From positions 20,398,001 through 20,462,000 of the forward strand of contig NC_135250.1 of assembly GCF_964204865.1 (NCBI RefSeq): a stretch of 64,000 nucleotides of DNA, in the 5' to 3' direction. Below are positions 25,707 through 64,000 of this stretch, piece by piece. The notes beneath the pieces were generated by a model. It was not told the DNA's origin. It saw only the letters and a list, made by a program, of their open reading frames with translations, and did not search any database. The number at the start of each line of letters is the position of its first letter. Position 1 is the first letter of the stretch. This DNA is from Styela clava (Eukaryota). A program made the translations under genes and the position numbers.

Positions 25707-28475
25707 CTAACGCAGTGGCTTTCTTTCCAATGAGCTACCGGGACTATGGGCGCTATTTACAGTTCCGGTGCTAGACCTACAACTGCTCAAAGTGTCGTAG
25801 TGTGTATTGGGCACTGGCTTCCACGATGCGCTAAGGTATGTATTTGCATTAGAATCTATCTTCGGGTTGTTCTTTTTTGCATCATATACGACCACTCGCG
25901 CCGAGTTTGTTATGACGGATTCCCGTCTATTATATCGATGATGTGTAAATAAAAATCGAACATCACTGTTCCTCCATTTTCTTTTAACAATTCTCCAGTC
26001 CGCTTTGTTCACAACGCAATACAATAAAAATATTTGAAGTCCTTGGAGGCCATTTACTACGGTATGTGCTGTTAGAAGAGTAGTGGTCGCACCAGGTATA
26101 TTACCTAGAATACCCAGTATCCACGGAATTGCAAGAACTGGCATTAATATTGCAAATGTTCGAGTCACAGATAGCATATGTTTCACATGCCTTTTTTGTC
26201 TGGCAGCCGACCCAAGAGGTATGGCACCGCTACCAATCGATGTGATCGAAGATCGATATCGTGGCGGGGGTGTACTGCCACGACTTTGGATGGCGTTCCC
26301 ATTTGAGTAACCGTATTGAGTGTTGCTCGATTCAAAGTTTCTCACTCGGTAAGTTTGAATTTTTCTATTCATCTTCATAACACCTTTTGTTATGTAGCAC
26401 AAAATGGCTATATTTGCCACAACGACAAATATAATTGGACCAACAGCAGTCCATACAATTCCGCTGTCAGCACTCAGCCAACATCTTTCATACATTGGCG
26501 TTGAATATGATGTATTTTGTGATTTCTGTAGAGTAATTTTATAGGCTTCAGCCAAATCGATATACTTGTTGTTTGATATCCCGTATGCTGCCGCAGGTAC
26601 CGTAAAAACTAGAGGCGCACACCAAGCAAATACAGTTTGCACTATTGTCAAAGTAGGATATTCCACGTTCAATGTTAGTTTCGGAAACATCTTCACGAAT
26701 ATTCCGAGTCCTTCGCAAAAGGACCAAAAGCCCGTGGCAAGTAGGAAATAATGAGTCATTATGGTGGCTGCTACACATCCGTTATCATTATGATTTCTTG
26801 CGAAATCGCTCCAAACAATAACTAAGTGGAGACACAGTAACGAAACACAAAGACTAACTTGCGAGTTTGTTCGGTTCGAGTTCATACCTGTTGCTTTTGG
26901 TGCGAATGTGGAATCAATACCAGCCCCGTGTCTCGCAATCAATATAAATAAAACTGTAAGTAACAAGCAGCATATGCTTGCAATCTCAAAAGCCAGAGAG
27001 ATATAATGAACCTCGGCCGGCATAACCACCGAACTATTCAACATTAATAAAGTCACGAAGGTCGTCGTGTGTTCGCACTCGCACGTCACTCCGCCGGCAT
27101 TTGATTTCGTGGATCGGCATCCTTTGTCACTCCACGTTCCGGTTGTTGTGAAATCAAACCAGACGCACACTCGCTGAACATTTTTGATTCTTTCGTTGGA
27201 TTTCAAGCCTTCAAGTTCGGTGAAGTCATTTTGGAGATCCACAGAATAAGTAACTGGTAAACTTTCTTTGATCATATCCAATTTATCATTTTCGCGATAA
27301 TAAGCAACCGTCACAGCAGTTACATTTTCCGGTATTCTAGCATCTGACCGCGTCAAGTTTCTAGGCATAGTACTCATGTCTTTCCATAATGCTACAACCA
27401 CGGTTAGTTTGGATACTTGTTTTCCACTAATTTTTGTCGCATTCAACACTTTTTTTATTGGAATTTGGACATGAACAGAACTAGCTTCGCTCGGCTTTAT
27501 TTCCAGCGAAGAAACATTGTCGCTTGTTGTAACGTTACCATCATTATTTCTTGTAGAAATTGGATTCAAGGATATTGTTTGTACAACGACGGTGACGTCT
27601 TCTCTAATAATTTCGTCATTATCGAGCTTTGCGAAATCTTCGGAAACAGATTCTTCAAATTTCCTTATTTTTGAGGCGGCGTCCCCAACGAGCAATTCGA
27701 GATCTGTGGAAATGAAATAACTCAAATTCAACTGCGTGCTAAATAAAAACTACTTATCCACGAAATGAGTAATTGGAAATTTTAACGCGCTGTACAAATT
27801 TTGTATATTATCCTACACTTATTAGAGAAAAAATATTTTATTGAATAAAAAATCATGCTTACGTACTTTTATGAGCTGTTTGTGTCGGATCGAGTTCTGG
27901 ATATTCTGGTGATGTGCGATTCACTGGTTCTGCAATAATTATAGAAAGAGCAAGATTCAATCACTGATCTAAGTCGAATTTAAATCAGAAAACAAAAAGT
28001 CAAAATATGGATTAATTTCGAAGTAAAGTTTACTCTCGTTTATTTTTGCGTTAAGTTCAGATTGTGAATAAAGTATTTTTTAAGAAAGATCGCGTTATGG
28101 AGTATGGATGACAAAACAGGAAGCACCGTTAGTTGGCGATCCGCGAAAGTTTGACCACTAGATGAGCTGGTAATGTTCTTCTATTACGTATATGTTATTG
28201 CATTATTGATGATTGAACTATTACTTATAAACAATATGCTAGAATTGTGTATGTATATAATTGCCATGTATATTAATAATGAAAGAACTTACTTTTTTCA
28301 TTTAGTGATTGAGAATTGATTCCGTCAACTATTAAATAAAAATGGCAAATTTAAAAAACAAATCAAGGCACACTCTGTAACAGCGACAATTTGAAAAGAT
28401 TTCACAATAAATCGAAAATTTACCTGCGCCCAACGTTAAGAGTAGCACAATAATCAACATATGATAAACATCCAT
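25707..28475 (-). CDS. Adhesion GPCR (class B2), intron-poor, ~703 aa
   Basis: Signal exon MDVYHMLIIVLLLTLGA (28424-28475), a 63-nt exon (27867-27929), and one 1997-nt exon (25707-27703) with GPS CVWFDF..W...GC..CECEHTTTFVTLL, seven hydrophobic segments, HYFLLA..FW..CEG, RCWLS and VVNGLQGLQIFLLYCV. Confidence 0.9.
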
Positions 28476-52174: not shown

Positions 52175-52543
52175 CTATAAACCATAGAGATTTTGGGCAA
52201 GTCGAATGGCAGAACGATCCAATTATTGATTACTGTATATCCAAGCAAAATCCGATTTGCACTCTCTATTCGGGTATCGGCTATTATCCGGAACCAGAAA
52301 GCATACAAAATATACACATTTATGTGCATTGTGGAGCGCGGTTGGAGAGAGCTGTTCGACGGGCAGTGAAACGCGGGTTTCGGTATAGGTTAATTTTACA
52401 CGTACGCTATCTATCTTGCGTAAGGTTTGATCGTACATATTAGTAAGTGTTTCCGGGAGCAGAATTATGTTGTTTGTCGGTGTCCATGTTCTACGCCCAT
52501 CTATATACATTGGATGCTCAACCTGTACAAATCGGGTTATCAG

Positions 52544-54776
52544 CAGTGTTCCCGCAAAGAAAATTTCACACTGCGCAAATGTTGTTTTTACTGAGCAAGA
52601 CCCATTTAAGGCTGAGCAGAACCCTAAATTATTTGCAAACTTTGTGAAAAGTTACAATAGTAGCCTATCATATATTATCGGAATGCGAACAAACCACACG
52701 TTTAACTTCTTCTGTACTTAATGTATAGGCTTACCATACAGTCCCGCTTCTTAGCGCCTTGTCCCGCCGTCCCGACAAGTCAGCCAATAGTCCCGCTTTG
52801 GCGTTCAGCCATCCAGCATAATACACGAACATGTTCTCCTTACTGTTGTTGCTGTGTAGCGCAACGCTAGCCTACTTACTGAAGGTGAATGCGTTATTTT
52901 GTTTGTTTCGTTGTTTCCCGCCAACATTGTTAGCGAACTTATCACATGTAAAACCAATTCTAATTGGTCCTGTTCGGACATTCACGTGAATGTAACATTA
53001 ACCAACGTCTTTTTGAATGTGTTATCTACAGAAAAGCATGCTTGGGCGAATAGGTAAATTCTCAATGCTTGAAAACGGCAGACTATTCCATTATTCTTTA
53101 TACCTTTTGTTGTGCATAACCAAATCTAAATTCGGATCATTTGTATCGTTAGCGTCTTTCACGAGGACCTTTCACCGAGCATCGACTTCCTTGTTTACTT
53201 CGTGGCATTGGCCAATCAGCAAGATGCAAAAAGTGACGTAACAATGCTCCCTTTTCGCATCCGTTCAGACACTTTTCTCACTCAGACAGATTTTCAAGCG
53301 TGGTCGTAAACATTACCTTGTTTTCGCGTTTTTGAACTCTATTCGTTAGTTTTCAGTTTATTTCGGAAATTTAAAAAATAAATCAGATAATTCAATGATC
53401 ACTCTGTCTTCCTAGGAGTTTTAATTTAATTGTAGTAATAAAAAATTAGTGTGGAAATAGCTGTGATAGACTAGGCTAAAATTATTTACAGGTACTTTTA
53501 AAAAACAGATTGTTGTATGCGATCAATCATGATGATGGTGTGAAACACATACCCCAGTTTACAGGCGCCAACTCGCAAAAGCACTCTTAAAATAGCCCCG
53601 AAAATTTTGCAATGGTAAAGTACAGGAAGAATTTTTCAGGGGTCAAAGGTTGGGGAAAGGTCCATTCATTTCTATTTTTCGAACTGAACCCGATATTCAG
53701 ACGAAGAATATGCGCATGAACTTTCGATGACAAATATGGTCAATGAAGACAGCCGTCTTTAAATGTAGGCCCATGTACTAAAATCGGAAACTGTAAAGTT
53801 ACAGGATCACAGCTAAGTGGTCATGTTTTTGAAAGCGTCCCGCTTTGAAGTCAAAAAAATATTCTAATCTCTAAATATTCTAACCCTATTAATGTACAAT
53901 CTCAACATTTTTGTTGTTGAAATATCATTGCTTCCATCAAAATTAGGGCATGAAATTTTGCTTCAGCGGTCGGTATTGCGGTGAAAAAGTTCGAGTTAAT
54001 GCATCTAGTGCGTCAATGTGCTTTCATGATTTAAATGAAGTTTTAGATAGTCAGTCCCGCCCACGATTTGCCTTCTCCAAATCACTATCTATTGCCACTT
54101 CCGACATACTTTGCAGAATATCACATTCCTTGACGCGGAATAGCAATAAATTTCGCAAATTTTAGTAGTTTGTTTTTTTTAGCTTATACATAACGGTATC
54201 ACGATTTTCTTATTTTTAGCCTTGCTTCCTTAAATATACATTATACTCACACGCCAAATAAAGAACACCGGTATATTGGTTTTGGTTGAAATGCCTAACA
54301 CTCTTTTTAGTAATTTCTGGTGAATATACTTATTATATAATCATTCAGTATAAGCTCATGTGTCCCAATCTCGAGATTCAAGCAAATTTCCTGTAACAAG
54401 CAGTGGGCACATTTGATACCATTTAAAATTCCATCTTCATATGTGTTCAACTTCACTACAGACAATATAACAAGATTTGGCGGGGTTGACAACTCGAAAT
54501 CCAGAGCGCGCGATGAAAATTTCGAAATGCGACACTGCCCCGTGCTGGCATACAGAAATCAAGGTAATTGAGCGTGACAGACACATGTGTGACATCACAA
54601 TGATCAGGGGTTACCCAAAATACGCGTGAAACATAGGAGTATTTTAGATAAGCGTGAATAAAATTACATATGAAAATATGAACCGCGCTTTAAAAAGGAA
54701 GCTGCGCGAGAATGAGATTTTACTGCGCAGATGTTCTGGTGGTACTGCGCAATTGCGCAGCTTAGAGGGAACCTTG
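52544..54776. mobile_element. hAT (Tip100-like) element with near-perfect 8-bp TSD
   Basis: Ends CAGTGTTCCC / GGGAACCTTG with TGCGCA subterminal motifs. Flanks GTTATCAG (52536-52543) and GTTACCAG (54777-54784). Confidence 0.75.
52726..53888. mobile_element. hAT (Blackjack-like) element nested in the Tip100-like element
   Basis: Ends TAGGCTTACCATA / TATTCTAACCCTA, GTCCCG subterminal repeats, perfect 8-bp TSD TTAATGTA (52718-52725, 53889-53896). Confidence 0.8.
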
Positions 54777-54891
54777 GTTACCAGAAAAGCAAATAAAATA
54801 AAATGCGTGGGTTAACCTATCTGTGTAAATATCGATCCCGTCTGAAATCTATCTCTATCGTTTGTTATTGTCGAAGCGTAGAGGTCTTGGT

Positions 54892-56176
54892 ATGGCGAGT
54901 AATGATGACCCTAATACGCGAGATATACTTACAGATGTGAGAAATGCAGACAGGGCAGGAGAAAGAGAAAATCTGTTCTATTTATATGTTGCTACGCCAA
55001 AAAGACCGCCTTCTGCACTACATAAAAAAGTTATTCGGCCGTTTCTGATATCGAAAGGTTGGAGGAAAGTCAGCTATGAAAGGACAGGCTTCAGGTGAAA
55101 TCATGTTGTTTATACTTTCATATCTGAAGGATAATATACTGTAACAACTATTGAATGATAAATGATAACATGAGCATATAACAGCGACGCAGCGATGTTG
55201 ATCTGTTAATCACGCAAAAAATAGGAGATGTCAGGGATTTAGTATCAATCAAAGAGCAGCCGAGGGCTGGTTCTGTTATTCTTTCATATTCTGTATTCTA
55301 TAGTTTATGTCCGATTCGACAATTGAAATTATACTTCATTTAAAGGTCCGTTTATAGCGTTACTTTTGTTGACACAGTCGTTCGACGTCTCGATTATACA
55401 CTATATAGGTAATGAAGGAGCTTATGAATAAATAATCGCCGAATAAGCCGCACGGACCACGGCAAGTTAAATTGAAATGCGTGAAGCAAACGCAATATCG
55501 CAAAAAGTCTTTTTGACTTTGATATAAAATCTAGATCTTATGGCTTTAGTAACGTCACAAACTTTCATATTATAAACATATATTATATATATATATATAT
55601 ACATCTGTTTTGTTCACAGTAGTTTTTCAAACAACGTATCTCGTAATCCAAGCTCCGATAGCATATAAATATCCAGGCATCAATTACCAAGCCCTTTACC
55701 TAAAATTAAATCACTTTATTTGTGTTTCTGCTTGCATGATTTTGATCCTATACTGTGCGTACTTCTTCTAGCTGATTAACTGATACATCATACACTGGTA
55801 TAGTTTATTCAAGTACAATTACAAAAATGTTTTTCCTTCACACAGAGCACTTTACTTTTTGAGAAGAAGACAAGAAACCACACCAACTGTCGAACAACAC
55901 AGCAATCGTGATCAGTCAAGTTCTGAGGTAATAATCATCACTGATAGCGATGCTGAAGACGGACCAAGTAGTTCTCAAAGTCGAAGACCACGCTTGAGAA
56001 GGAATACACAAATTCCTATAGCTATAAATGCAACTCAAATAGCCACGGATCATCGCACTGAACTAAAGCAAGTCATCGAAAATTATAGGATACAACATGA
56101 TTTAACTTTCGATGTTCATATAGTTCTTTCTAGGCCTATCGACTATGAGGTAGATTTTGCAGGGCTTGCGAGTTGA
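54892..56176 (+). CDS. Uncharacterised small protein, tandem copy 1 (177 aa, 2 coding exons)
   Basis: Exons 54892-55094 and 55846-56176 joined by a phase-2 GT-AG intron (TGFR/ALYFLRRRQE). Frame and intron position are conserved in copy 2. Confidence 0.75.
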
Positions 56177-56552
56177 CCGGGTTCTTTGGAGCCGTGAAAT
56201 ATTAAAAGTCGATATTTGTTCAAAATTGGAAAATGCCACCAACATAATCAAATGGAATATTCGAAATTCTTGAGCACAATGTTGAAACCCAGAAAAAATT
56301 CATTAAAGCTCCCGTGAAAATATGAAAAACTTTCATGTATTAGCAGATAAACACTCAGACCTAACGTATCCTATACTGCAGCGTAAACTGTTTGGGTAGT
56401 TTTTCTACCTTACTATATAAAAGTTACTATATATATAATATGTATCGTTGTATATTTATAATGCTTTTAAGAATTCATAGTTTGTTAATCAGCCTTTTTC
56501 ATTTATTCTCCACAAATCTCTTCGTTCTTTACATTGTGCCGTAAACAAAATA

Positions 56553-57357
56553 TCGTCAGGCTAATAACCGAGTTTTGAGTTTTTTTTATAAATTAAGTAT
56601 TTATCTAATGCTGCGCACCTGTCTGTTAACTCTTATTTTATCTTAAGAATTTCAAAACCCATAAAGATTGAGATTTTGTATGACATGCAAATTTGTTCAA
56701 TTGTTTCGTCATCATGAATTTTCATTGTTAACGCAGAACTATTGTGACGTCACAAAGGCGAAATAACTTCGGCGAAGGATTTTCGAGTTTTTGCATCTCA
56801 GATTCTAGTTTAGCGCTTATAAATTTGAATTTATACTACAGTATAGGAAGGCGTGCACTTGTGATATTCACTGTCTGAGTCCAATTCACATTGTTCGGCT
56901 ACTATATAAGGGTACATTGCTGTTTCATTCTTTATATTTAATCTTAGTCTTTTTTCGGTGGGTGTGCAGACCGTGTTATATTGATGAAATATATATTTTT
57001 AAACATAAAAAATAATGTAATTGAAACTGATTAGCTATTTTGGGGATTAGACATTGTAGATACTGAGAATTACATTCGTGTTTGGAATGTTTAGTTTTCA
57101 GGCGTGGTGCATATAGTAAATTTGCAAAATTGCGTATGTCCCCAAGTCATAGACACATTTCTGCCTAAGTCACAGTGCGCCATTATGACGTCACTTAACT
57201 GCGTCATACAAATTAACTTAAATCCGGCTACAATCAAAAAATTGATCCATGGCAAATTATTGACACTCAATGGCATAACAATATCATTAGGAAGTTTTTT
57301 ACGTTTTTCTCAAAACTGCTAAAAAAGACTTACGCAATTCGGTTATTAGCGTGACGA
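56553..57357. mobile_element. TA-flanked MITE copy 2
   Basis: Homologous to 40881-41714. The left TIR carries a short deletion shared with copy 3. Confidence 0.85.
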
Positions 57358-57914
57358 TATACTATTCAAATTACATAACAATGTGGGAATTTTACTTTCA
57401 CAACGGTTACCCAATGATTTTGAAGATATTCTGACCATCAATGAACGAAAACAGTTATTTCGACAGATGATGTAATGTGAACATGTTTGTGTGATAAATT
57501 GTTGTACAAGAAACCTCAGTTAAATAAGAAGACTTGAGTTAAGAACTTGAAATCAACATAAGAAAGTTAAATCCGTTACTTTAGGCCCCATATTCGTATG
57601 GATTTGATTTTGATCAATCCGAATGGCAGAACGATCCAATTATTGATTACTGTATCCGAGGAAAATCCGATTCACACATCGGCCATTATCCGCAACCAGC
57701 AAGCATACAAAATATACGGATTTACTTGCATTGTAGAGCGCGATGCGGGGGAGCTGTTCGACGGGCAGTGAAACGCAAGTTTCGGTATAGGGAAATTTTA
57801 CACGTACGCTATTTATCGTGCGTAAGGTTTGATCGTGTATATTAGTGAGTGTTTCCGTGAGCATCATAGGACGACGGTAACAGAATTATATTGTTTAACG
57901 TGGGTACAAGAGAA

Positions 57915-58075
57915 GGCTGTTCGAACTTTTTCGCCACAATACGGACTGCTGAAGAGAGTGAAATGTAGATAATATATGATATGCAAATAATGTAGGACTC
58001 TGCTCAGCTTTAAAATAGTCTTGCTCAGTAAAAACAACATTTGCGCAGTGTGAAATTTTCTTACAGGGAACACAG
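57915..58075 (-). mobile_element. Inverted fragment of the Tip100-like element left end
   Basis: Reverse complement of 52544-52650 plus a match to ~53970-53995. Abuts GTTATCAA. Confidence 0.7.
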
Positions 58076-58193
58076 GTTATCAAGAAAGCAAATATAAGGT
58101 ATGAGTGAACCTTTCTGTGTAAATATCAATCTCGTCTGGAAGCCCTTCTAACGTTTGTTACTTTCGAGGCTTAGAGGTCTTATTATAGGAGGT

Positions 58194-60369
58194 ATGGACC
58201 CTGATACGCAAGATATACTTGCAGATGTGAGAGATGCAGACGAAGCAGGAGAAAAAGAAAATGTGTTCTTTTTATATGTTGCTACACCAAAAAAACCGCC
58301 TTCAGCACTACACAAAAAAGTCATTGAGCCCTTTCTGAGATCGAAAGGTTGGAGGAAAGTCAGCTATAGAAACACAGGCTTCAGGTGAAATCATGTTGTT
58401 AATACTTCCGTATCTGAAGAATAATATAATGCAACAACTATTGAATAATAAATGATCTCATATATAGCCGCGGTAGAAGGTAGGAGGCTTTGTACCAATC
58501 TAAGAGCAGCCGATTGCTGGTTCTGTTATTCTTTTATTTACTGTGTTCTATAATTTATATCCTATTTGCAATTGAAATCATACTTCATTTAAAGTTCAAT
58601 TCATAGACATAGACGTTCTTGTTGACACAATCATTCAACGTCTCCATTATACAACATACAGAGAATAATGGAGCTTATGAGTAAACGGAAACGGCATTAA
58701 ATGATTGCGAGAGAACCCGCACCGACCCTGACGAGTTAAATCGAAATACATAGTAAACTAAATATCGCAAAAAAGTCTTATTGACTTTTGATAATAAAAC
58801 TGTATTGATATGAAATCTAGATCTCGTGGTTTCTGTAACGTTGCAAACTTTCATACGCACGTGTTTAGTTCAAAGTAATTTTTAATACAACCTATATATA
58901 TGTGTCGCTATCCAAGCTCCTATAGCATATAAATATCCAGGCAACAACTCATTAGTATATTAAATCATTATATATATATCTATAACTGAAACAAAATCGC
59001 CTCACATTGATACCGTTGCACAATATGCAGGTGGCAGATAAATTAAGGTTAGGAACAGAAATTAACGCAAATTTGGACGTAAAAATTTGCCACTTTGAGT
59101 GTCTATCCGATACGACTCCAAGTGTCCACATATGCGAAGGCGCGAAATCATGAGTTTGGAAACTCTGAGACAAAATATTCCGAAAAACTCTCAATTCTCC
59201 GCGACCGAATTTGCCGTTTTCATGCCTGGCCTTCAAATCTTCTACTGCAGGCAGAATATTACCAAAACAATTTTGATGCTTCGAACCCAGTCAAAAGATA
59301 AAAAAAAATGTGGATCTTATGGTTTAGTTGAGCAGTGGTCGGCAAACTTTACGTACTTGCGGCCCAAATATACATATTTCCGGTAGCGCGCGGGCCGCAT
59401 TATTTCATCGTCTACGAACAATCGCCGCATTAAACTTCAAATTATGGCCTGTCACAACGATGGGACGTTCATCAAGTAAATGGCATAGAACTGACGCTAC
59501 TTATAACGAAACAAGTGCCGTACAGCAGCACTTGTTACCACATAAATCCGGGTGGAGGCAATAATAAATTTAGGATCAATTTTTGTTTTATGCATTAAAA
59601 GACGGGTTGTTTGCGGGCCGCAAAAATTATGTCGCGGGCCGCAAAAAATTAGTTCACGTGCGCATTTGGCCCGCGGGCCGCAGTTTGCCGATTACTGAGT
59701 TAGAGTAATAAATCTTCTCCTCGATTTTGTAAAATCTTGGATCTCAATTTGTGTTTTTGTTTGGATTATTTTGATCCTACGGGGCTTACTTGCTTCCAGC
59801 TACTGAACTGCATCAAAAGTCTATAACTATATGTATATATGTATGTGCATTTTTGCGTTTGTTGTTATTTTTACTTGTCCATCTCTGTCTAAAATCCTAC
59901 ATCATATATTGGTTAATGTAGTTTATTCAAGTACACATGCAAAAATGTTTTTTTTTCTCCACACAGAGCACTTTACTTTTTAAGAAGAAGACAGGAAATC
60001 CCATTAGCTGTGGAACAAAACAGCAATCGTGATCAGTCTGTTTCTGACATAATAGACCTCGTATCGGATGAAAGCGATTCTGATGACGGACCAAGTAGTT
60101 CTCAAAGTCGAAATACAACCTTGAGAAAGAATACGCAAATTCGTCAACAAAACTTTTCACAATTCGACTCCCAACCCAACGATGATTCACAAGCTATTAT
60201 TGCAACTCAAAAAGCCACGAATCACCGCACTGAACTAAAGAAAGTCATCGAAGATTATAAGACACAACATGGTCTAACTTTCCATGTTCATATAGTTCTT
60301 TCTAGACCGATCGACTACGAGGTAGATTTTGTGGAGCTCGCGAGTCAGTCGGGTTCTTTAGAGCCGTAA
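58194..60369 (+). CDS. Uncharacterised small protein, tandem copy 2 (197 aa, 2 coding exons)
   Basis: Exons 58194-58384 and 59967-60369, with the same phase-2 intron. Indels relative to copy 1 preserve frame. Confidence 0.75.
59333..59697. mobile_element. hAT (Charlie-like) MITE in the intron of copy 2
   Basis: CAGTGGTCGGCAAAC / GTTTGCCGATTACTG TIRs, GCGGGCCGC subterminal repeats, flanks AGTT-GAG and AGTTAGAG. Confidence 0.8.
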
Positions 60370-60722
60370 AATATTAAAAGTCGATATTTGTTCAAAATTG
60401 GAAAATGCCACCAACATAATCATGGAATATTCGAAATTCTTGAGAACAATGTTGAAACCCAGAAAAAAATCATTAAAGCTCCCGTAAATATATGAAAAAC
60501 TTTCATGTATTAGCAGATAAACACTCAGACCTAACGTATCCTATACTGCAGCGTAAACTGTTTGGGTAGTTTTTCTACCTTACTATATAAAAGTTACTAT
60601 ATATATAATATGTACCGTTGTATATTTATAATGCTTTTAAGAATTCATAGTTTGTTAATCAGCCTTTTTCATTTATTCTCCACAAATCTTTTGGTTCTTT
60701 ACATTGTGCCGTAAACAAAATA

Positions 60723-61527
60723 TCGTCAGGCTAATAACCGAGTTTTGAGTTTTTTTTATAAAATAGGTATTTATCTAATGCTGCGCACCTGTCTGTTAAC
60801 TCAGATTTTATCTTAAGAATTTCAAAACCCATAAAGATTGAGATTTTGTATGACATGCAAATTTGTTCAATTGTTTCGTCACCATGAATTTTCATTGTTA
60901 ACGCAGAACTATTGTGACGTCACTAAGGCGAAATAACTTCGGCGAAGGATTTTCGAGTTTTTGCATCTCAGATTCTAGTTTAGCGCTTATAAATTTGAAT
61001 TTATACTACAGTATAGGAAGGCGTGCACTTGTGATATTCACTGTCTGAGTCCAATTCACATTGTTCGGCTACTATATAGGGGGACATTGCTGTTTTATTC
61101 TTTATATTTAATCTTAGTCCTATTTCGGTGGGTGTGCAGACCGTGTTATAGTGATGAAATATATATTTTTAAACATAAAAAATAATGTAATTGAAACAGA
61201 TTAGCTATTTTGGGGATTAGACATCGTAGATACTAAGAATTATATTCGTTTTTGGATTGTTTGGTTTTCAGGACTGCTGCATATAGTCAAGTTGCAAAAA
61301 TGCGTATGTCCCCAAGTCTTAGACACATTTCTGCCTAAGTCACAGTGCGCCATTATGACGTCATATGACTGCGTCATACAAATTAACTTATTTCCGGCTA
61401 CGATCAAATAATTGAATTATAGCAAATTATTGACTCTCAATGGCATAGCAATATCATTAGAAAGTTTTTTACGTTTTTCTCAAAACTGCTAAAAATGACT
61501 TACGCAATTCGGTTTTTAGCGTGACGA
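60723..61527. mobile_element. TA-flanked MITE copy 3
   Basis: Homologous to copies 1 and 2, with the same left flank as copy 2. Confidence 0.85.
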
Positions 61528-62341
61528 TATTGTGTTCAAATATTGTGTGTCGTCGTCATTTTTTTTATTTTTCCATTCGCGGTCTCGAACTGTAAGTGGA
61601 ATGAGATCGAGTCACTCGAAAGCATTTGAATGGATAATGCTGTGTAGTATAAAACTCAATGAATCAATCAATATTTATATGTTATATACTGTTTCTATAA
61701 CATGGTTTTAAAACTGTGTACCGTGACAGATTTACAGGTATGCTGTGGAGCTTTTTGAATTAACAAAAATTAATTGTATTGCGGATTAAACATATTATTA
61801 TTTATCCATATTGTGGACTATTTTATTCTATCCTCTTATATTAAGTGTTTTTTTGAACTGACCCCAGTTTAACAAATATTTTAACGTCGTATCGTCGACA
61901 TCGCTCGTTTTTTTCATCATTTTCCTAACTCTGAATTTATTTGCAGAAAAATTGATAATCCATGGCACAAAAATGTTCAGACAATGCTCGTTCACACAAT
62001 AGCACCATCGACGTCAGTACTCCATCACCGAAAAGTCGAAACTTGGTCATTTATACTTTCTGAGAATGTCCTTGGTCTCATGAGGAGCAAGTATTTCTAT
62101 GTAGGATCAAAGCACTTCTTACAGCCTTCAGCTGCTGATTCTGAATTTTCGTTTCGAAAAATGACTGTTTGGGGACAAATTGTTGTTTTTCTTATACTAT
62201 ACTAGAACAATCCTTTTCAATTTTTCTGAACCATTTGAAGCCATTAATTTTGCTGAACTTGGCGTATATCCTATATTCCCAGGAATCAGGACAGTGTTCT
62301 TTCCTTTAATAAACCATTATCCGCAATACCTGTACGTTAAT

Positions 62342-62512
62342 TTTTCAATTATCTTATACCTTATGGATGTTCTGTTTTATACATCATACAGTCTGACTTG
62401 GTCATCGGTGACCGTCAACACCAATTTTCAATTATCTTATACCTTATGGATGTTCTGTTTTATACATCATACAGTCTGACTTGGTCATCGGTGACCGTCA
62501 ACACCAATTTTC
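62342..62512. repeat. Perfect 83-bp tandem duplication
   Basis: TTTTCAATTATCTTATACC... unit starts at 62342 and 62425. Confidence 0.9.
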
Positions 62513-62529
62513 CATCACCGTGCTCCATT

Positions 62530-64000
62530 TCACATCAATAATCAAGTTGTTTGAGTTTAATGATTTGATTTTTGAGTGTTTCCATATTATTCTTAATATG
62601 TACAACTAATTCCAATTACACCAAAGTCTTTCAGTGGATGTCCAGGTTGGATAAAGTGAACACCAACGACCAGGTCTCTGTTTTTCGATTTAATACTTCT
62701 AATATATTATGATCTGAGATCCGATATTTCAGATGCCTTCCTGTTTCGCCAATATACTGTATGCCACATTTGTTACAGCTTATCAAGTAGCCGACTTTTT
62801 CCGCGTTGCACGCTATTTTTTGATTCATTTTTAGTTGAATAGTTTTGTGTTTGTTTGTCGCTACTTTACTCTCTTTAGAATGTTCGCAGGTACTGCATGA
62901 CTGTCTTCCGCATAAAAAGAAAACTGGATTGTAGCTGACATGTGCTGGCTTCAGCTTGGCTCTAACTAGCCTGCCTCTGAGTGTAGGGCATTTTCGGTGA
63001 GCTAATTCAGGTGGATTTGGAAAAAAATTCAATCTCTCGTTGTTGTTTAAAACGTATTAGTAATTTTTTCGAAAATTGGGTTGGGTGATGGATTCTAATG
63101 AAAGGAAGCAAGGTTTCGTTTTTACTTACCATGTTGGGTAGTAAAAAAAAAGTTTTTTATCTAATTCTCTCACAAACTGCAAAGCATTGTCAATAAGATT
63201 TTTTTTTAATATCACCTCATAAAGTATCGTTCCATTATTTCCGCACGCTTGTCGAAAAACTCGGTAGTTGAACAAGCTCCTCTTATTCTGATGTAAAGGA
63301 TTTGGGGGATATTTTTCGTCGCATGTTTAGGATGACAGAAAGATGGCGGTATTGTATAGGTATTTATGTGAATCTGTTTCTTTGCTAAAAAAATTCAGTT
63401 TCTAATTTGTTCTTAATGATGTAAACTTTGACATCCAAAAACGTGATACTATTCGGTGAGTATTCGAAAGTCAACTTGATGGTCGGATGTCATGAATTTG
63501 CTAGCTAGGGTAACAAATTCTAAAAGTTTCTCTTTACCATGCGTCCGAATCATGGAACAGTCGTCAATAAAGCGGCAATAATAATCATGTGGTTTGAAAA
63601 AGGTTTTCCTAATAATTTAGACTCCAGATCTGCCATGACAATATCATTATATTTCAGTACCAACTTGGTTCCCATCGCCTTTCCTTGAATTTGAAGGTAA
63701 TATTTCTCATCAAAAACAAAGTTGTTGTTTGTAAGAACCAAGGCAGCAGCTTCTGTTATGCAAGATATTTCTCACCTATTAATTTTATATCTTTAGATAG
63801 ATATCTTTCCATTACTGCTGTACCGTCATCGTGGGGGATATTGTGCACTGTACATCGATACCACATTCATGCTCACTAATAAAGATTTCTGTTGGATTGT
63901 CTTGATCTCTTTCAAATGATTCAAGAAATCCATCTCCAATGTATGAAGGTATTATTTCCTTACAAAAGAAGGGGATAAATTTATGGCCTACAAAAGCCAA
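62530..64000 (-). mobile_element. Decayed Penelope-like retroelement (RT + GIY-YIG endonuclease), runs off the window edge
   Basis: RT fragments VLTNNNFVFDEKYYLQIQGKAMGT and a frameshifted RFIDD. Cys-linker CGRQSCSTCEH. GIY-YIG VGYLISCNKCGIQYIGETGRHLKYRISDH. Multiple frameshifts. Confidence 0.9.

What the first reader, a model, noticed from the sequence alone, without database searches (positions are those of the whole stretch)
54892..60369. Tandem pair of unrecognised spliced genes with a predicted compact beta-alpha-beta-beta-alpha-beta core
Seen: two paralogous two-exon genes (177 and 197 aa) with a conserved phase-2 intron, frame-preserving indels and strongly conserved blocks (F.LYVATPK.PPSALHKKVI.PFL.SKGWRKVSY..TGFRALYFLRR and HRTELK.VIE.Y..QH.LTF.VHIVLSRPIDYEVDF). 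A probable 5' UTR intron lies just upstream. I recognise no family. Inference: with the central loop removed, hydrophobic periodicity reads strand-helix-strand-strand-helix-strand, the ferredoxin-like topology of Cas2/VapD/GhoS-type small RNA-acting proteins, including a helix ending FL.SKGW like the FL..GF turn of Cas2. The Asp after strand 1 that Cas2 needs is absent, so a binding role is as plausible as nuclease activity. The TE-dense, duplicating setting fits a fast-evolving lineage-specific, possibly defence-related, family.
Basis: partly seen in the sequence, partly recalled or inferred. Interest (0 to 1): 0.75.

Follow-up and report, generated by a model that had tools for sequence, protein, structure and literature searches.

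The report
Orphan chordate palm-fold gene, duplicated
Two neighbouring sea-squirt genes belong to a small unnamed protein family shared by sea squirts and sharks, with a common compact fold and unknown function; one copy looks healthy and the other seems to be decaying.

Summary
The window is Styela clava. They equal NCBI's uncharacterized LOC144425776 (177 aa, copy A) and LOC120346967 (197 aa, copy B). Both GT..AG phase-2 junctions occur in RNA-like contigs.

The family is neither lineage-specific nor fast-evolving. Relatives occur in Ciona, Phallusia, Clavelina and four sharks or skates, with 41-54% core identity. The intron position and phase are shared, and the tree follows taxonomy. There is no Pfam, PDB-sequence or literature match.

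The insert carries a SUMO-interaction-like motif in Styela-type members. In the other unnamed and named ascidian-type members it carries two CxxC pairs, usually around a basic run. Sharks have no insert.

Copy B is conserved and expressed. Copy A evolves much faster, lost the conserved tail to a stop codon, has repeats in its 5' region, and is barely expressed.

Best reading: a non-catalytic, probably nuclear binding module of unknown ligand.

The parts
54892..55094 (+). Gene A (LOC144425776) exon 1, coding. It holds the N-terminal helix, strand 1, helix 1, strand 2 and the start of the TGFR hairpin.
   Evidence: Translation. It equals the first part of P0002. The X1 contig lies on 54910-55091 and is joined to 55843.
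55095..55845 (+). Gene A intron, GT..AG, phase 2.
   Evidence: Sequence. Joint 55091>55843 'GT..AG (cut +3)' is seen in X1.
55846..56176 (+). Gene A exon 2, coding. It holds strand 3, the disordered insert, helix 2 and strand 4, and ends at TGA 56174-56176.
   Evidence: Translation; P0002.
55928..55960 (+). SUMO-interaction-like motif of copy A (VIIITDSDAED).
   Evidence: Motif census. The consensus is taken from passages of PMC8616421.
56177..56197 (+). Vestige of the conserved C-terminal tail (PGSLEP plus the old stop), now lying behind copy A's premature stop.
   Evidence: Sequence. The family profile reads through 1 TGA to position 182 of 184.
52462..54795 (.). 2.3-kb block of interspersed repeats, present only in copy A. 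It splits the region homologous to copy B's transcribed 5' leader.
   Evidence: BLASTN blocks. The own-genome search listed 52 matches among 40 scored of 4446 candidates. Most matches are to a unit of about 500 bp at 93-94% identity. That unit has inverted ends at 53165-53186 and 53642-53663.
57768..58193 (+). Gene B 5' leader, transcribed without a gap in the RNA-like contigs.
   Evidence: X1 contig 57768-58306, X2 contig 57862-58381 and X4 contigs 57829-58075 and 58077-58252.
58194..58384 (+). Gene B (LOC120346967) exon 1, coding.
   Evidence: P0001. X2 contig with joint 58381>59964 'GT..AG (cut +3)'.
58385..59966 (+). Gene B intron, phase 2. It carries a repeat insertion at about 59333-59697 that copy A lacks.
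   Evidence: Inverted arms 59333-59348 and 59682-59697. High depth at 59308-59691 in X10.
59967..60369 (+). Gene B exon 2, coding, with the full conserved tail ASQSGSLEP.
   Evidence: Translation. 100% identical to P0001. X1 and X2 contigs lie on 59964-60368.
60049..60087 (+). SUMO-interaction-like motif of copy B (IIDLVSDESDSDD).
60370..60776 (+). Gene B 3' UTR. Its extent is inferred.
   Evidence: The X2 contig continues 408 nt past the stop. That part was laid on the paralogous 56197-56604 because the stretch I gave ended at 60450. The two 3' regions are 98% identical over 300 nt.
56700..57360 (.). Interspersed repeat of about 660 bp downstream of gene A. A second copy lies downstream of gene B.
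   Evidence: The own-genome search listed 70 matches, with 40 scored of 1010 candidates. The long matches are 93-94% identical. Depth is very high in all four runs.

Best explanation
These are two tandem copies of an old, unnamed chordate gene family, found in ascidians and cartilaginous fishes.

The protein is one small domain: an N-terminal helix, a ferredoxin-like/palm-like beta-alpha-beta-beta-alpha-beta core, and a C-terminal helix with a short conserved tail. It lacks the acidic residues that palm-domain cyclases and Cas2 nucleases use.

I infer that it is a binding module rather than an enzyme. Its most conserved surface is the end of strand 1 (VATPG) and the strand 2-3 hairpin (SYxxTGFRALYF). 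These are the positions where palm domains hold their ligand.

A lineage-specific disordered insert after strand 3 probably directs the protein. In Styela-type members it holds a SUMO-interaction-like motif. In the other ascidian-type members it holds two CxxC pairs, usually around a basic run that looks like a nuclear signal. Sharks have no insert.

The likely role is a small nuclear adaptor that binds a nucleic acid, nucleotide or protein partner.

In this window, copy B is the conserved, expressed gene. Copy A is a relaxed or decaying duplicate.

Shown here: the gene models, splicing, family range, fold class, absence of the catalytic motifs, and the asymmetry between the copies.

Inferred: binding rather than catalysis, nuclear location, SUMO binding, and the ligand.
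For: Gene models and splicing.

Family range:
- A profile of the two copies found 14 proteins at E<=1e-3 among 1.84 billion representatives. One of them, P0006, is repetitive and matches only the loop.
- A 15-sequence profile found 23 proteins at E<=0.01 among 4924 candidates. They include Ciona intestinalis, C. savignyi, Phallusia, Clavelina, Chiloscyllium, Hemiscyllium and Cetorhinus. Rhinoraja is named.
- Shark-to-tunicate identity is 41-54% over 128 core columns. The four cartilaginous fishes form one side of a 100/100 branch.

Intron conservation:
- The same phase-2 intron is present in a metagenome ascidian-like contig: TTC AG|gtgag..tgcag|G GCC.
- In skates it is implied by mis-called fragments: P0021 reads ...TGFR then diverges, and P0013 begins MDGRR then ALYF.

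Fold:
- The skate model has pLDDT 79.2 and pTM 0.75.
- The copy B model has block-mean pLDDT 81-98 over the core elements, apart from the first and last blocks, and below 50 for residues 82-132.

Conserved columns: T31 16/16, P32 15/16, G52/W53/K55 15/15, T61/G62 16/16, R64 19/19, L66 18/18, H172/S176/P178 22/22.

Insert census:
- A SIM-like motif occurs in 5 of the 6 Styela-type sequences that cover the insert. P0003 lacks it.
- Two CxxC pairs occur in 11 other sequences.
- Neither occurs in 4 of 4 shark or skate sequences.
- The SIM consensus comes from PMC8616421 passages.

Asymmetry of the copies:
- Unique changes are 17 in A against 3 in B with outgroup P0038 (binomial p 0.0026), and 11 against 3 with P0003.
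- Tree branches are 0.27 for A against 0.0075 for B.
- A's premature stop removes the conserved tail.
- A has 2.3 kb of repeats in its 5' region.
- A's exons have depth 0 in 2 of the 3 RNA-like runs.
Against: - No experiment and no annotated relative gives a function.
- I had no model coordinates. The statement that conserved residues sit at the palm ligand site rests on secondary-structure order and on my recollection of GGDEF anatomy.
- The SIM consensus is degenerate, and P0003 (the third Styela copy) lacks the motif.
- Sharks have neither the insert nor a basic run, so nuclear targeting is not a family-wide feature.
- dN/dS between A and B is 0.61, not significantly below 1 when pooled (Fisher p 0.096). 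It is 0.43 as an odds ratio in the cores (p 0.043). Copy A may therefore still be under some constraint rather than decaying.
- The RNA status of the runs is a guess by the tool.
- Absence from bony vertebrates, lampreys and amphioxus rests on protein databases only.
Confidence: 0.55

Rival explanations
1. One reading: a Cas2/VapD/GhoS-like small protein acting on RNA, either as a nuclease or as an RNA binder, possibly in defence.
For: The core has the same strand-helix order. Cas2, VapD and GhoS chains appear among the weak neighbours.
- Foldseek: 4qr0_B E 0.22, TM 0.61 normalised by target; 2llz (GhoS) E 0.29.
Against: - They rank below GGDEF-type domains, which fill the first 24 rows in model 1 and the first 17 rows in model 2 (by title; two titles and one do not name the domain). 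They also align only 75-89 residues, against 102-119.
- Lrp/AsnC, ACT, peptidase-lid and even a de novo ferredoxin-fold protein score alike.
- The Asp after strand 1 is replaced by invariant T-P. That this Asp defines Cas2 is recalled, not taken from a call.
- No Cas2 or VapD Pfam model hits any of the 24 members at E<=1.
- This is a spliced gene conserved from ascidians to sharks, with no partner gene.
Confidence: 0.07
2. An active enzyme that uses the palm-like site with unusual residues, for example a nucleotidyl cyclase or transferase built on the conserved T, H, K, Y, R, S and D instead of the usual acidic pair.
For: The best structural neighbours are nucleotide cyclases. The strongest conservation falls on the loop after strand 1, the strand 2-3 hairpin and strand 4. 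Invariant polar residues (H40, K55, Y58, T61, R64, H172, S176) are more than a scaffold would need.
Against: - There is no GG[DE]EF motif and no metal-binding Asp.
- PF00990 finds nothing in any member or anywhere in this genome, while it matches 8 of 14 control genomes.
- The domain is smaller than a full GGDEF or cyclase domain.
- Degenerate GGDEF receptors (PelD, LapD, FimX, BcsE) score as well as the active cyclases.
Confidence: 0.1
3. Not a host gene of its own: a transposon-borne or horizontally spread open reading frame that happens to sit in repeat-rich DNA.
For: The surroundings are full of interspersed repeats. The genome holds duplicated and broken copies. The phyletic pattern, tunicates plus cartilaginous fishes only, is patchy.
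Against: - There are only 4 loci in 377 Mb.
- The intron position and phase are conserved across lineages.
- The tree separates sharks and skates from tunicates and groups close relatives as taxonomy expects.
- No transposase or viral protein matches: Pfam and BFVD with 0 at E<=1e-3.
- The repeats lie beside the gene or in its intron, not around it as a unit.
Confidence: 0.03

Closest known systems
GGDEF / class III nucleotide cyclase palm domain (Pfam PF00990 and relatives), including degenerate receptor forms such as PelD, LapD, FimX and BcsE
   Different: - There is no sequence signal.
- The hairpin reads xxTGFRALYF, not GG[DE]EF.
- No Asp follows strand 1.
- The domain is shorter.
- It is a spliced animal gene.
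Cas2 / VapD / GhoS small ferredoxin-fold RNases
   Different: - The Asp after strand 1 is absent.
- The family here has extra N- and C-terminal helices.
- There is no Pfam match.
- There is no Cas1 or antitoxin partner.
- The scores are lower than for GGDEF domains and equal to those of many unrelated ferredoxin-fold proteins.
SUMO-interacting motifs of Daxx (IIVLSDSD) and PML (VVVI followed by Ser/acidic residues)
   Same: The inserts of copy A (VIIITDSDAED) and copy B (IIDLVSDESDSDD), and of three unnamed relatives (e.g. VIVLSDDE), fit the consensus. That consensus is hXhh or hhXh flanked by acidic or phosphorylatable residues, as described in PMC8616421 (passages read; census).
   Different: This is only a motif match in a disordered loop. 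No binding was tested. The consensus is degenerate, and the third Styela paralogue lacks it.

Membership tests
Cas2 (CRISPR_Cas2) / VapD | Ferredoxin-like beta-alpha-beta-beta-alpha-beta core | tested here: met
Cas2 (CRISPR_Cas2) / VapD | Conserved metal-binding Asp at the end of strand 1 (feature recalled, not from a call) | tested here: not met
   Strand 1 is followed by A-T-P-[GK]. T31 is conserved in 16/16 and P32 in 15/16 sequences, with no acidic residue.
Cas2 (CRISPR_Cas2) / VapD | Sequence match to the family model | tested here: not met
   None of the 24 members hits a Cas2 or VapD Pfam model at E<=1. The PDB profile search gave 0 at E<=10.
Cas2 (CRISPR_Cas2) / VapD | Genomic partner (Cas1/CRISPR array, or antitoxin) | tested here: not met
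   This is a spliced animal gene. Its neighbours in the window are repeats and an adhesion-GPCR open frame.
GGDEF diguanylate cyclase (PF00990) | Palm fold with a preceding helix | tested here: inconclusive
GGDEF diguanylate cyclase (PF00990) | GG[DE]EF hairpin and metal-binding Asp in strand 1 (features recalled) | tested here: not met
   The hairpin is Y-x-x-T-G-F-R-A-L-Y-F, and strand 1 ends V-A-T-P. The placement of these residues rests on secondary-structure order, not on a residue-level superposition.
GGDEF diguanylate cyclase (PF00990) | Match to the PF00990 model | tested here: not met
   None of the 24 members matches at E<=1. There are 0 matches in the whole Styela genome, while 8 of 14 control genomes match.
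Unnamed family typified by Ciona LOC100177587 and shark LOC132821417 | Significant sequence similarity over both conserved modules | tested here: met
   In the 15-sequence profile search, P0001 scored E 1.2e-68 and P0002 E 8.7e-60. The skate protein P0005 scored E 4.4e-31 with the Styela-only profile.
Unnamed family typified by Ciona LOC100177587 and shark LOC132821417 | Phase-2 intron between TGF-R and ALYF | tested here: met
   - Window copies.
- C10 copy, AG|GTAT...TTTTAG|A.
- Metagenome contig L011.
- Skate fragments P0021 and P0013 imply it.
Unnamed family typified by Ciona LOC100177587 and shark LOC132821417 | Conserved C-terminal tail [AT]-S-Q-P-[GN]-x-[IV]-E | tested here: inconclusive
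   Copy B has ASQSGSLEP. Copy A stops before the tail, and the tail is still readable behind the TGA.
SUMO-interacting motif | Aliphatic core hXhh or hhXh flanked by acidic or Ser residues | tested here: met
   Copy A VIII+TDSDAED and copy B IIDL+VSDESDSDD. Consensus from PMC8616421.
SUMO-interacting motif | Binding to SUMO | not testable with these tools
   This needs a pull-down or NMR titration.

The most novel reading that the evidence does not exclude
A non-catalytic, GGDEF-like palm domain has survived in chordates as a small nuclear sensor of a nucleotide second messenger or a nucleic-acid end. It would use the invariant VATPG loop and TGFRALYF hairpin as its pocket. It would be an ancient gene of the tunicate-vertebrate ancestor, kept by ascidians and cartilaginous fishes and lost by bony vertebrates.
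Probability: 0.07. Interest if true: 0.8.

Novelty: new variant of a known kind. Interest (0 to 1): 0.45.

Why it matters
If this reading is right, it defines a protein family with no Pfam model and no paper found under its gene identifiers. The family has been strongly conserved since the common ancestor of tunicates and vertebrates, yet it is missing from annotated bony-vertebrate proteomes. It is a compact domain of about 115 residues with a clear conserved surface, so its ligand and role can be tested directly in Ciona. The tandem pair in this window also shows asymmetric fate after duplication: one copy is almost unchanged, while the other is fast-evolving, truncated, interrupted by repeats and barely expressed.

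Tried and rejected
Searches that found nothing:
- Pfam on the four exon peptides and on 24 family members. The best was 2 of 24 members for one DUF at E 0.12.
- PDB sequence and profile searches. One chance hit at E 0.72 and none at E<=10.
- Foldseek against PDB and against viral models. 0 hits at E<=1e-3 in each.
- Paper search for six gene or protein identifiers. 0 papers.

Leads dropped:
- ESM Atlas gave only sub-threshold leads: 0.77 to tubulin-tyrosine-ligase fragment clusters and 0.76 to an unnamed viral cluster. I dropped the TTL lead because neither fold search supports it.
- HUH/Rep endonuclease. IS200 TnpA and SIRV ORF119 appear as weak neighbours. I rejected it because only one His sits on strand 4 and the conserved Tyr follows it too closely. 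This rests on recalled motif spacing.
- Transposon ORF. Rejected because there are only 4 loci in the genome.
- Synteny. The Brix/PPAN-like gene next to the homologue in metagenome contig L011 lies on another Styela contig, C5.

Not achieved:
- I could not make a profile-profile comparison with GGDEF or Cas2. No tool gave me sequences of those families, and the PF00990 genome search returned no loci.
- The search of earlier findings gave one unrelated note. It gave nothing for the words tried.
- No supplementary files were consulted.

Full report
**What is there**

The exon-2 peptide of the downstream copy is 100% identical to the NCBI protein 'uncharacterized protein LOC120346967 [Styela clava]' (P0001, 197 aa). 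The upstream copy corresponds to LOC144425776 (P0002, 177 aa).

- Gene A is 54892-55094 plus 55846-56176.
- Gene B is 58194-58384 plus 59967-60369.
- Both introns are GT..AG and phase 2, splitting the Arg codon of TGFR|ALYF.

I searched my own models exon by exon and left the joined step out. All full-length sequences used later are database records returned by the tools.

**Splicing and expression**

The run search listed thirteen runs. Nine hold about a fifth to a quarter of the stretch's words (0.19-0.25), as expected for exons only. Four hold about 80-88%.

I laid three of the low-share runs, from three studies, together with one high-share run.

- Gene B's junction lies inside a 1333-nt contig of X2 (57862-58381 | 59964-60368 | 3' UTR). 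Loose ends in X4 and X1 fit it.
- Gene A's junction is seen once, in a 204-nt X1 contig of depth 5.9.
- Gene A's exons have depth 0 in X2 and X4.
- The DNA-like control X10 covers all 30 bins with unspliced contigs.

The tool marks the RNA status of X1, X2 and X4 as a guess. Contigs cannot give strand or level.

The 'goes back 4172' joints arise from how I cut the stretch. It ended at 60450, so gene B's 3' UTR was laid on the 98%-identical 3' UTR of gene A.

No joint is listed in the 426 nt upstream of gene B's ATG, and three runs have contigs running through it. The proposed 5' UTR intron is therefore not supported.

**The family**

No Pfam model matches: 0 of 4 exon peptides at E<=10, and no family shared by more than 2 of 24 members at E<=1.

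A profile of the two copies, scored against 1.84 billion representative proteins, gave 14 hits at E<=1e-3. One of them (P0006, 1703 aa, repetitive) matches only the loop positions, and I set it aside.

A 15-sequence profile found 23 proteins at E<=0.01 among 4924 candidates. By the names the sources give, members come from:
- Styela clava, three genes;
- Ciona intestinalis, C. savignyi, Phallusia mammillata and Clavelina lepadiformis;
- the cartilaginous fishes Chiloscyllium punctatum, Hemiscyllium ocellatum, Cetorhinus maximus and Rhinoraja longicauda.

All are labelled 'uncharacterized'. The rest are unnamed metagenome or run assemblies. A search of the paper library for six of the identifiers found nothing.

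In the Styela genome the profile finds only four loci:
- the two copies in this window;
- an intact third gene on contig C10 (P0003, 161 aa);
- a frameshifted fragment about 24 kb from that gene, on the opposite strand.

**History**

Over 128 core columns, shark and skate proteins are 41-54% identical to ascidian ones.

In the maximum-likelihood tree, the four cartilaginous fishes sit on one side of a 100/100 branch. Skates and sharks form weakly supported pairs (87/82 and 86/79). The two Ciona species group together, and so do the Styela-type sequences (13 full-length rows, fragments left out).

The intron is at the same place and phase in four settings:
- the C10 copy;
- a metagenome ascidian-like contig, with a 71-nt intron, TTC AG|gtgag...tgcag|G GCC;
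- skates, by inference, because gene-caller fragments end at or begin from that point (P0021, P0013);
- the two copies in this window.

This fits vertical descent from the tunicate-vertebrate ancestor followed by loss elsewhere. It does not fit a young, fast-evolving, lineage-specific family.

The absence from bony vertebrates rests on protein databases only.

**Fold**

AlphaFold2 on the 131-residue skate protein, with 15 aligned sequences, gave pLDDT 79.2 and pTM 0.75. The elements are H5-17, E24-30, H39-49, E54-56, E66-70, H77-99, E106-110 and H115-124.

AlphaFold2 on copy B, with 24 sequences, gave the same order. Block-mean pLDDT is 81-98 over the core elements apart from the first and last blocks. 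Residues 82-132 fall below 50.

One helix is added at each end.

Foldseek found nothing at E<=1e-3 in PDB or BFVD. The weak rows are adenylyl cyclase, Cas2, VapD, GhoS, Lrp/AsnC, IS200 transposase and RRM.

VIA-align against 48,161 chains put GGDEF-type domains first for both models:

These row counts go by entry titles. Two titles and one do not name the domain.

PF00990 finds nothing in the family or in the genome, whereas it matches 8 of 14 control genomes.

**Conserved sites**

The best conserved columns (numbering of P0001) are:
- T31 and P32 after strand 1;
- H40 and P46 in helix 1;
- G52-W53 and K55;
- Y58 and T61-G62-F63-R64-A65-L66-Y67-F68, the strand 2-3 hairpin;
- R151, L154 and K155 in helix 2;
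- F169, H172, S176 and P178 around strand 4;
- Y181, D184 and F185.

From my recollection of palm domains, the end of strand 1 and the strand 2-3 hairpin are where cyclases hold metal and nucleotide. Here those places are the most conserved, but they carry no acidic pair. That is why I favour a binding role over catalysis. This step is an inference. No residue-level superposition was available.

Conserved TQ and SQ dipeptides occur in most members, at DTQDIL near the N-terminus and ASQPG in the tail. I note them only as a lead.

**The insert**

The insert sits after strand 3 and comes in three forms.
- Sharks and skates have almost none (4 of 4).
- Eleven sequences, including Ciona, Phallusia and Clavelina, have two CxxC pairs. 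A run of at least three basic residues lies between them in 8 of the 11 (e.g. KKRK).
- Five of the six Styela-type sequences that cover the region have an aliphatic run followed by Ser/Asp/Glu. Copy A has VIIITDSDAED and copy B has IIDLVSDESDSDD. The C10 paralogue lacks it.

The aliphatic-plus-acidic pattern fits the SUMO-interacting-motif consensus. That consensus is hXhh or hhXh with an acidic or phosphoserine flank, as in Daxx IIVLSDSD and PML VVVI plus Ser/acidic residues. I read this in passages of PMC8616421. The same review warns that the consensus is degenerate.

**The two copies**

BLASTN finds three homologous blocks between A and B:
- 52189-52461 with 57606-57863, 84% identical;
- 54796-55166 with 58090-58456, 85% identical;
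- 56020-57371 with 60192-61541, 94% identical, of which 56252-56551 is 98% identical.

The much higher identity of the 3' UTR suggests a later gene conversion there.

Copy A carries an extra 2.3 kb (52462-54795). This block is made of interspersed repeats. It lies inside what is copy B's transcribed leader.

dN/dS between the copies:
- pooled, 0.61 (172 codons, dS 0.229, Fisher p 0.096);
- C-terminal core, 0.37;
- insert, 0.90;
- both cores together, significantly below 1 (p 0.043);
- against the C10 copy, dS is saturated and dN is 0.33.

The divergence is one-sided:
- Where A and B differ, A alone departs from the outgroup at 17 sites and B at 3, using P0038 (p 0.0026). With P0003 the counts are 11 and 3 (p 0.057). 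More distant outgroups give the same direction without significance.
- Tree branch lengths are 0.27 for A and 0.0075 for B.
- Copy A reads NTR in place of the conserved DTQ.
- A TGA in copy A cuts off the conserved tail, which is still readable in frame behind it.

Copy B is therefore the working member. Copy A is relaxed, decaying or diverging.

**Verdict**

- The fold prediction was right.
- The specific Cas2/VapD link and the 'lineage-specific, fast-evolving, defence' reading are not supported.
- What remains is a real, old and unstudied small-domain family whose function is open.

Noticed in passing
window 56252-56551 vs 60422-60721: The 3' UTRs of the two copies are 98% identical over 300 nt. 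The coding exons and introns are only 80-89% identical. This looks like a later gene conversion confined to the 3' end.
   Followed up: partly
G000 contig C10, 9056361-9057751 (+) and 9032484-9032664 (-); loci L009, L010: There is a third intact family member (P0003, 161 aa, short insert without the SUMO-like motif). About 24 kb away on the opposite strand lies a frameshifted exon-1 fragment.
   Followed up: partly
window 60007-60198: RNA-like contigs of X1 and X2, from two studies, share about nine differences from the reference inside gene B's insert region. At 60040-60041 the codon becomes the one copy A has. This may be a divergent allele or exchange between the copies.
   Followed up: no
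window 25707-27731 (-): A 674-aa open frame looks like the cleavage-site and seven-helix part of an adhesion GPCR. The identification is by eye only.
   Followed up: no
window 62631-63032 (-): A 133-aa open frame contains ...CGIQYIGETGRHLKYRISDH.... From memory this resembles the GIY-YIG nuclease of Penelope-like retroelements. It was not tested.
   Followed up: no
window 62342-62507: A perfect tandem duplication of an 83-nt unit.
   Followed up: no
window 59333-59697: A repeat of about 365 bp with 16-nt inverted ends lies inside gene B's intron and is absent from gene A's intron. It has high depth in the DNA-like run, and RNA-like contigs cover it.
   Followed up: partly
L011 4299-5609 (+): In the metagenome ascidian-like contig, the family member lies about 0.4 kb downstream of a 436-aa open frame that looks like a Brix/PPAN ribosome-biogenesis protein (by eye). 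The Styela counterpart is on contig C5, so there is no shared neighbourhood.
   Followed up: yes
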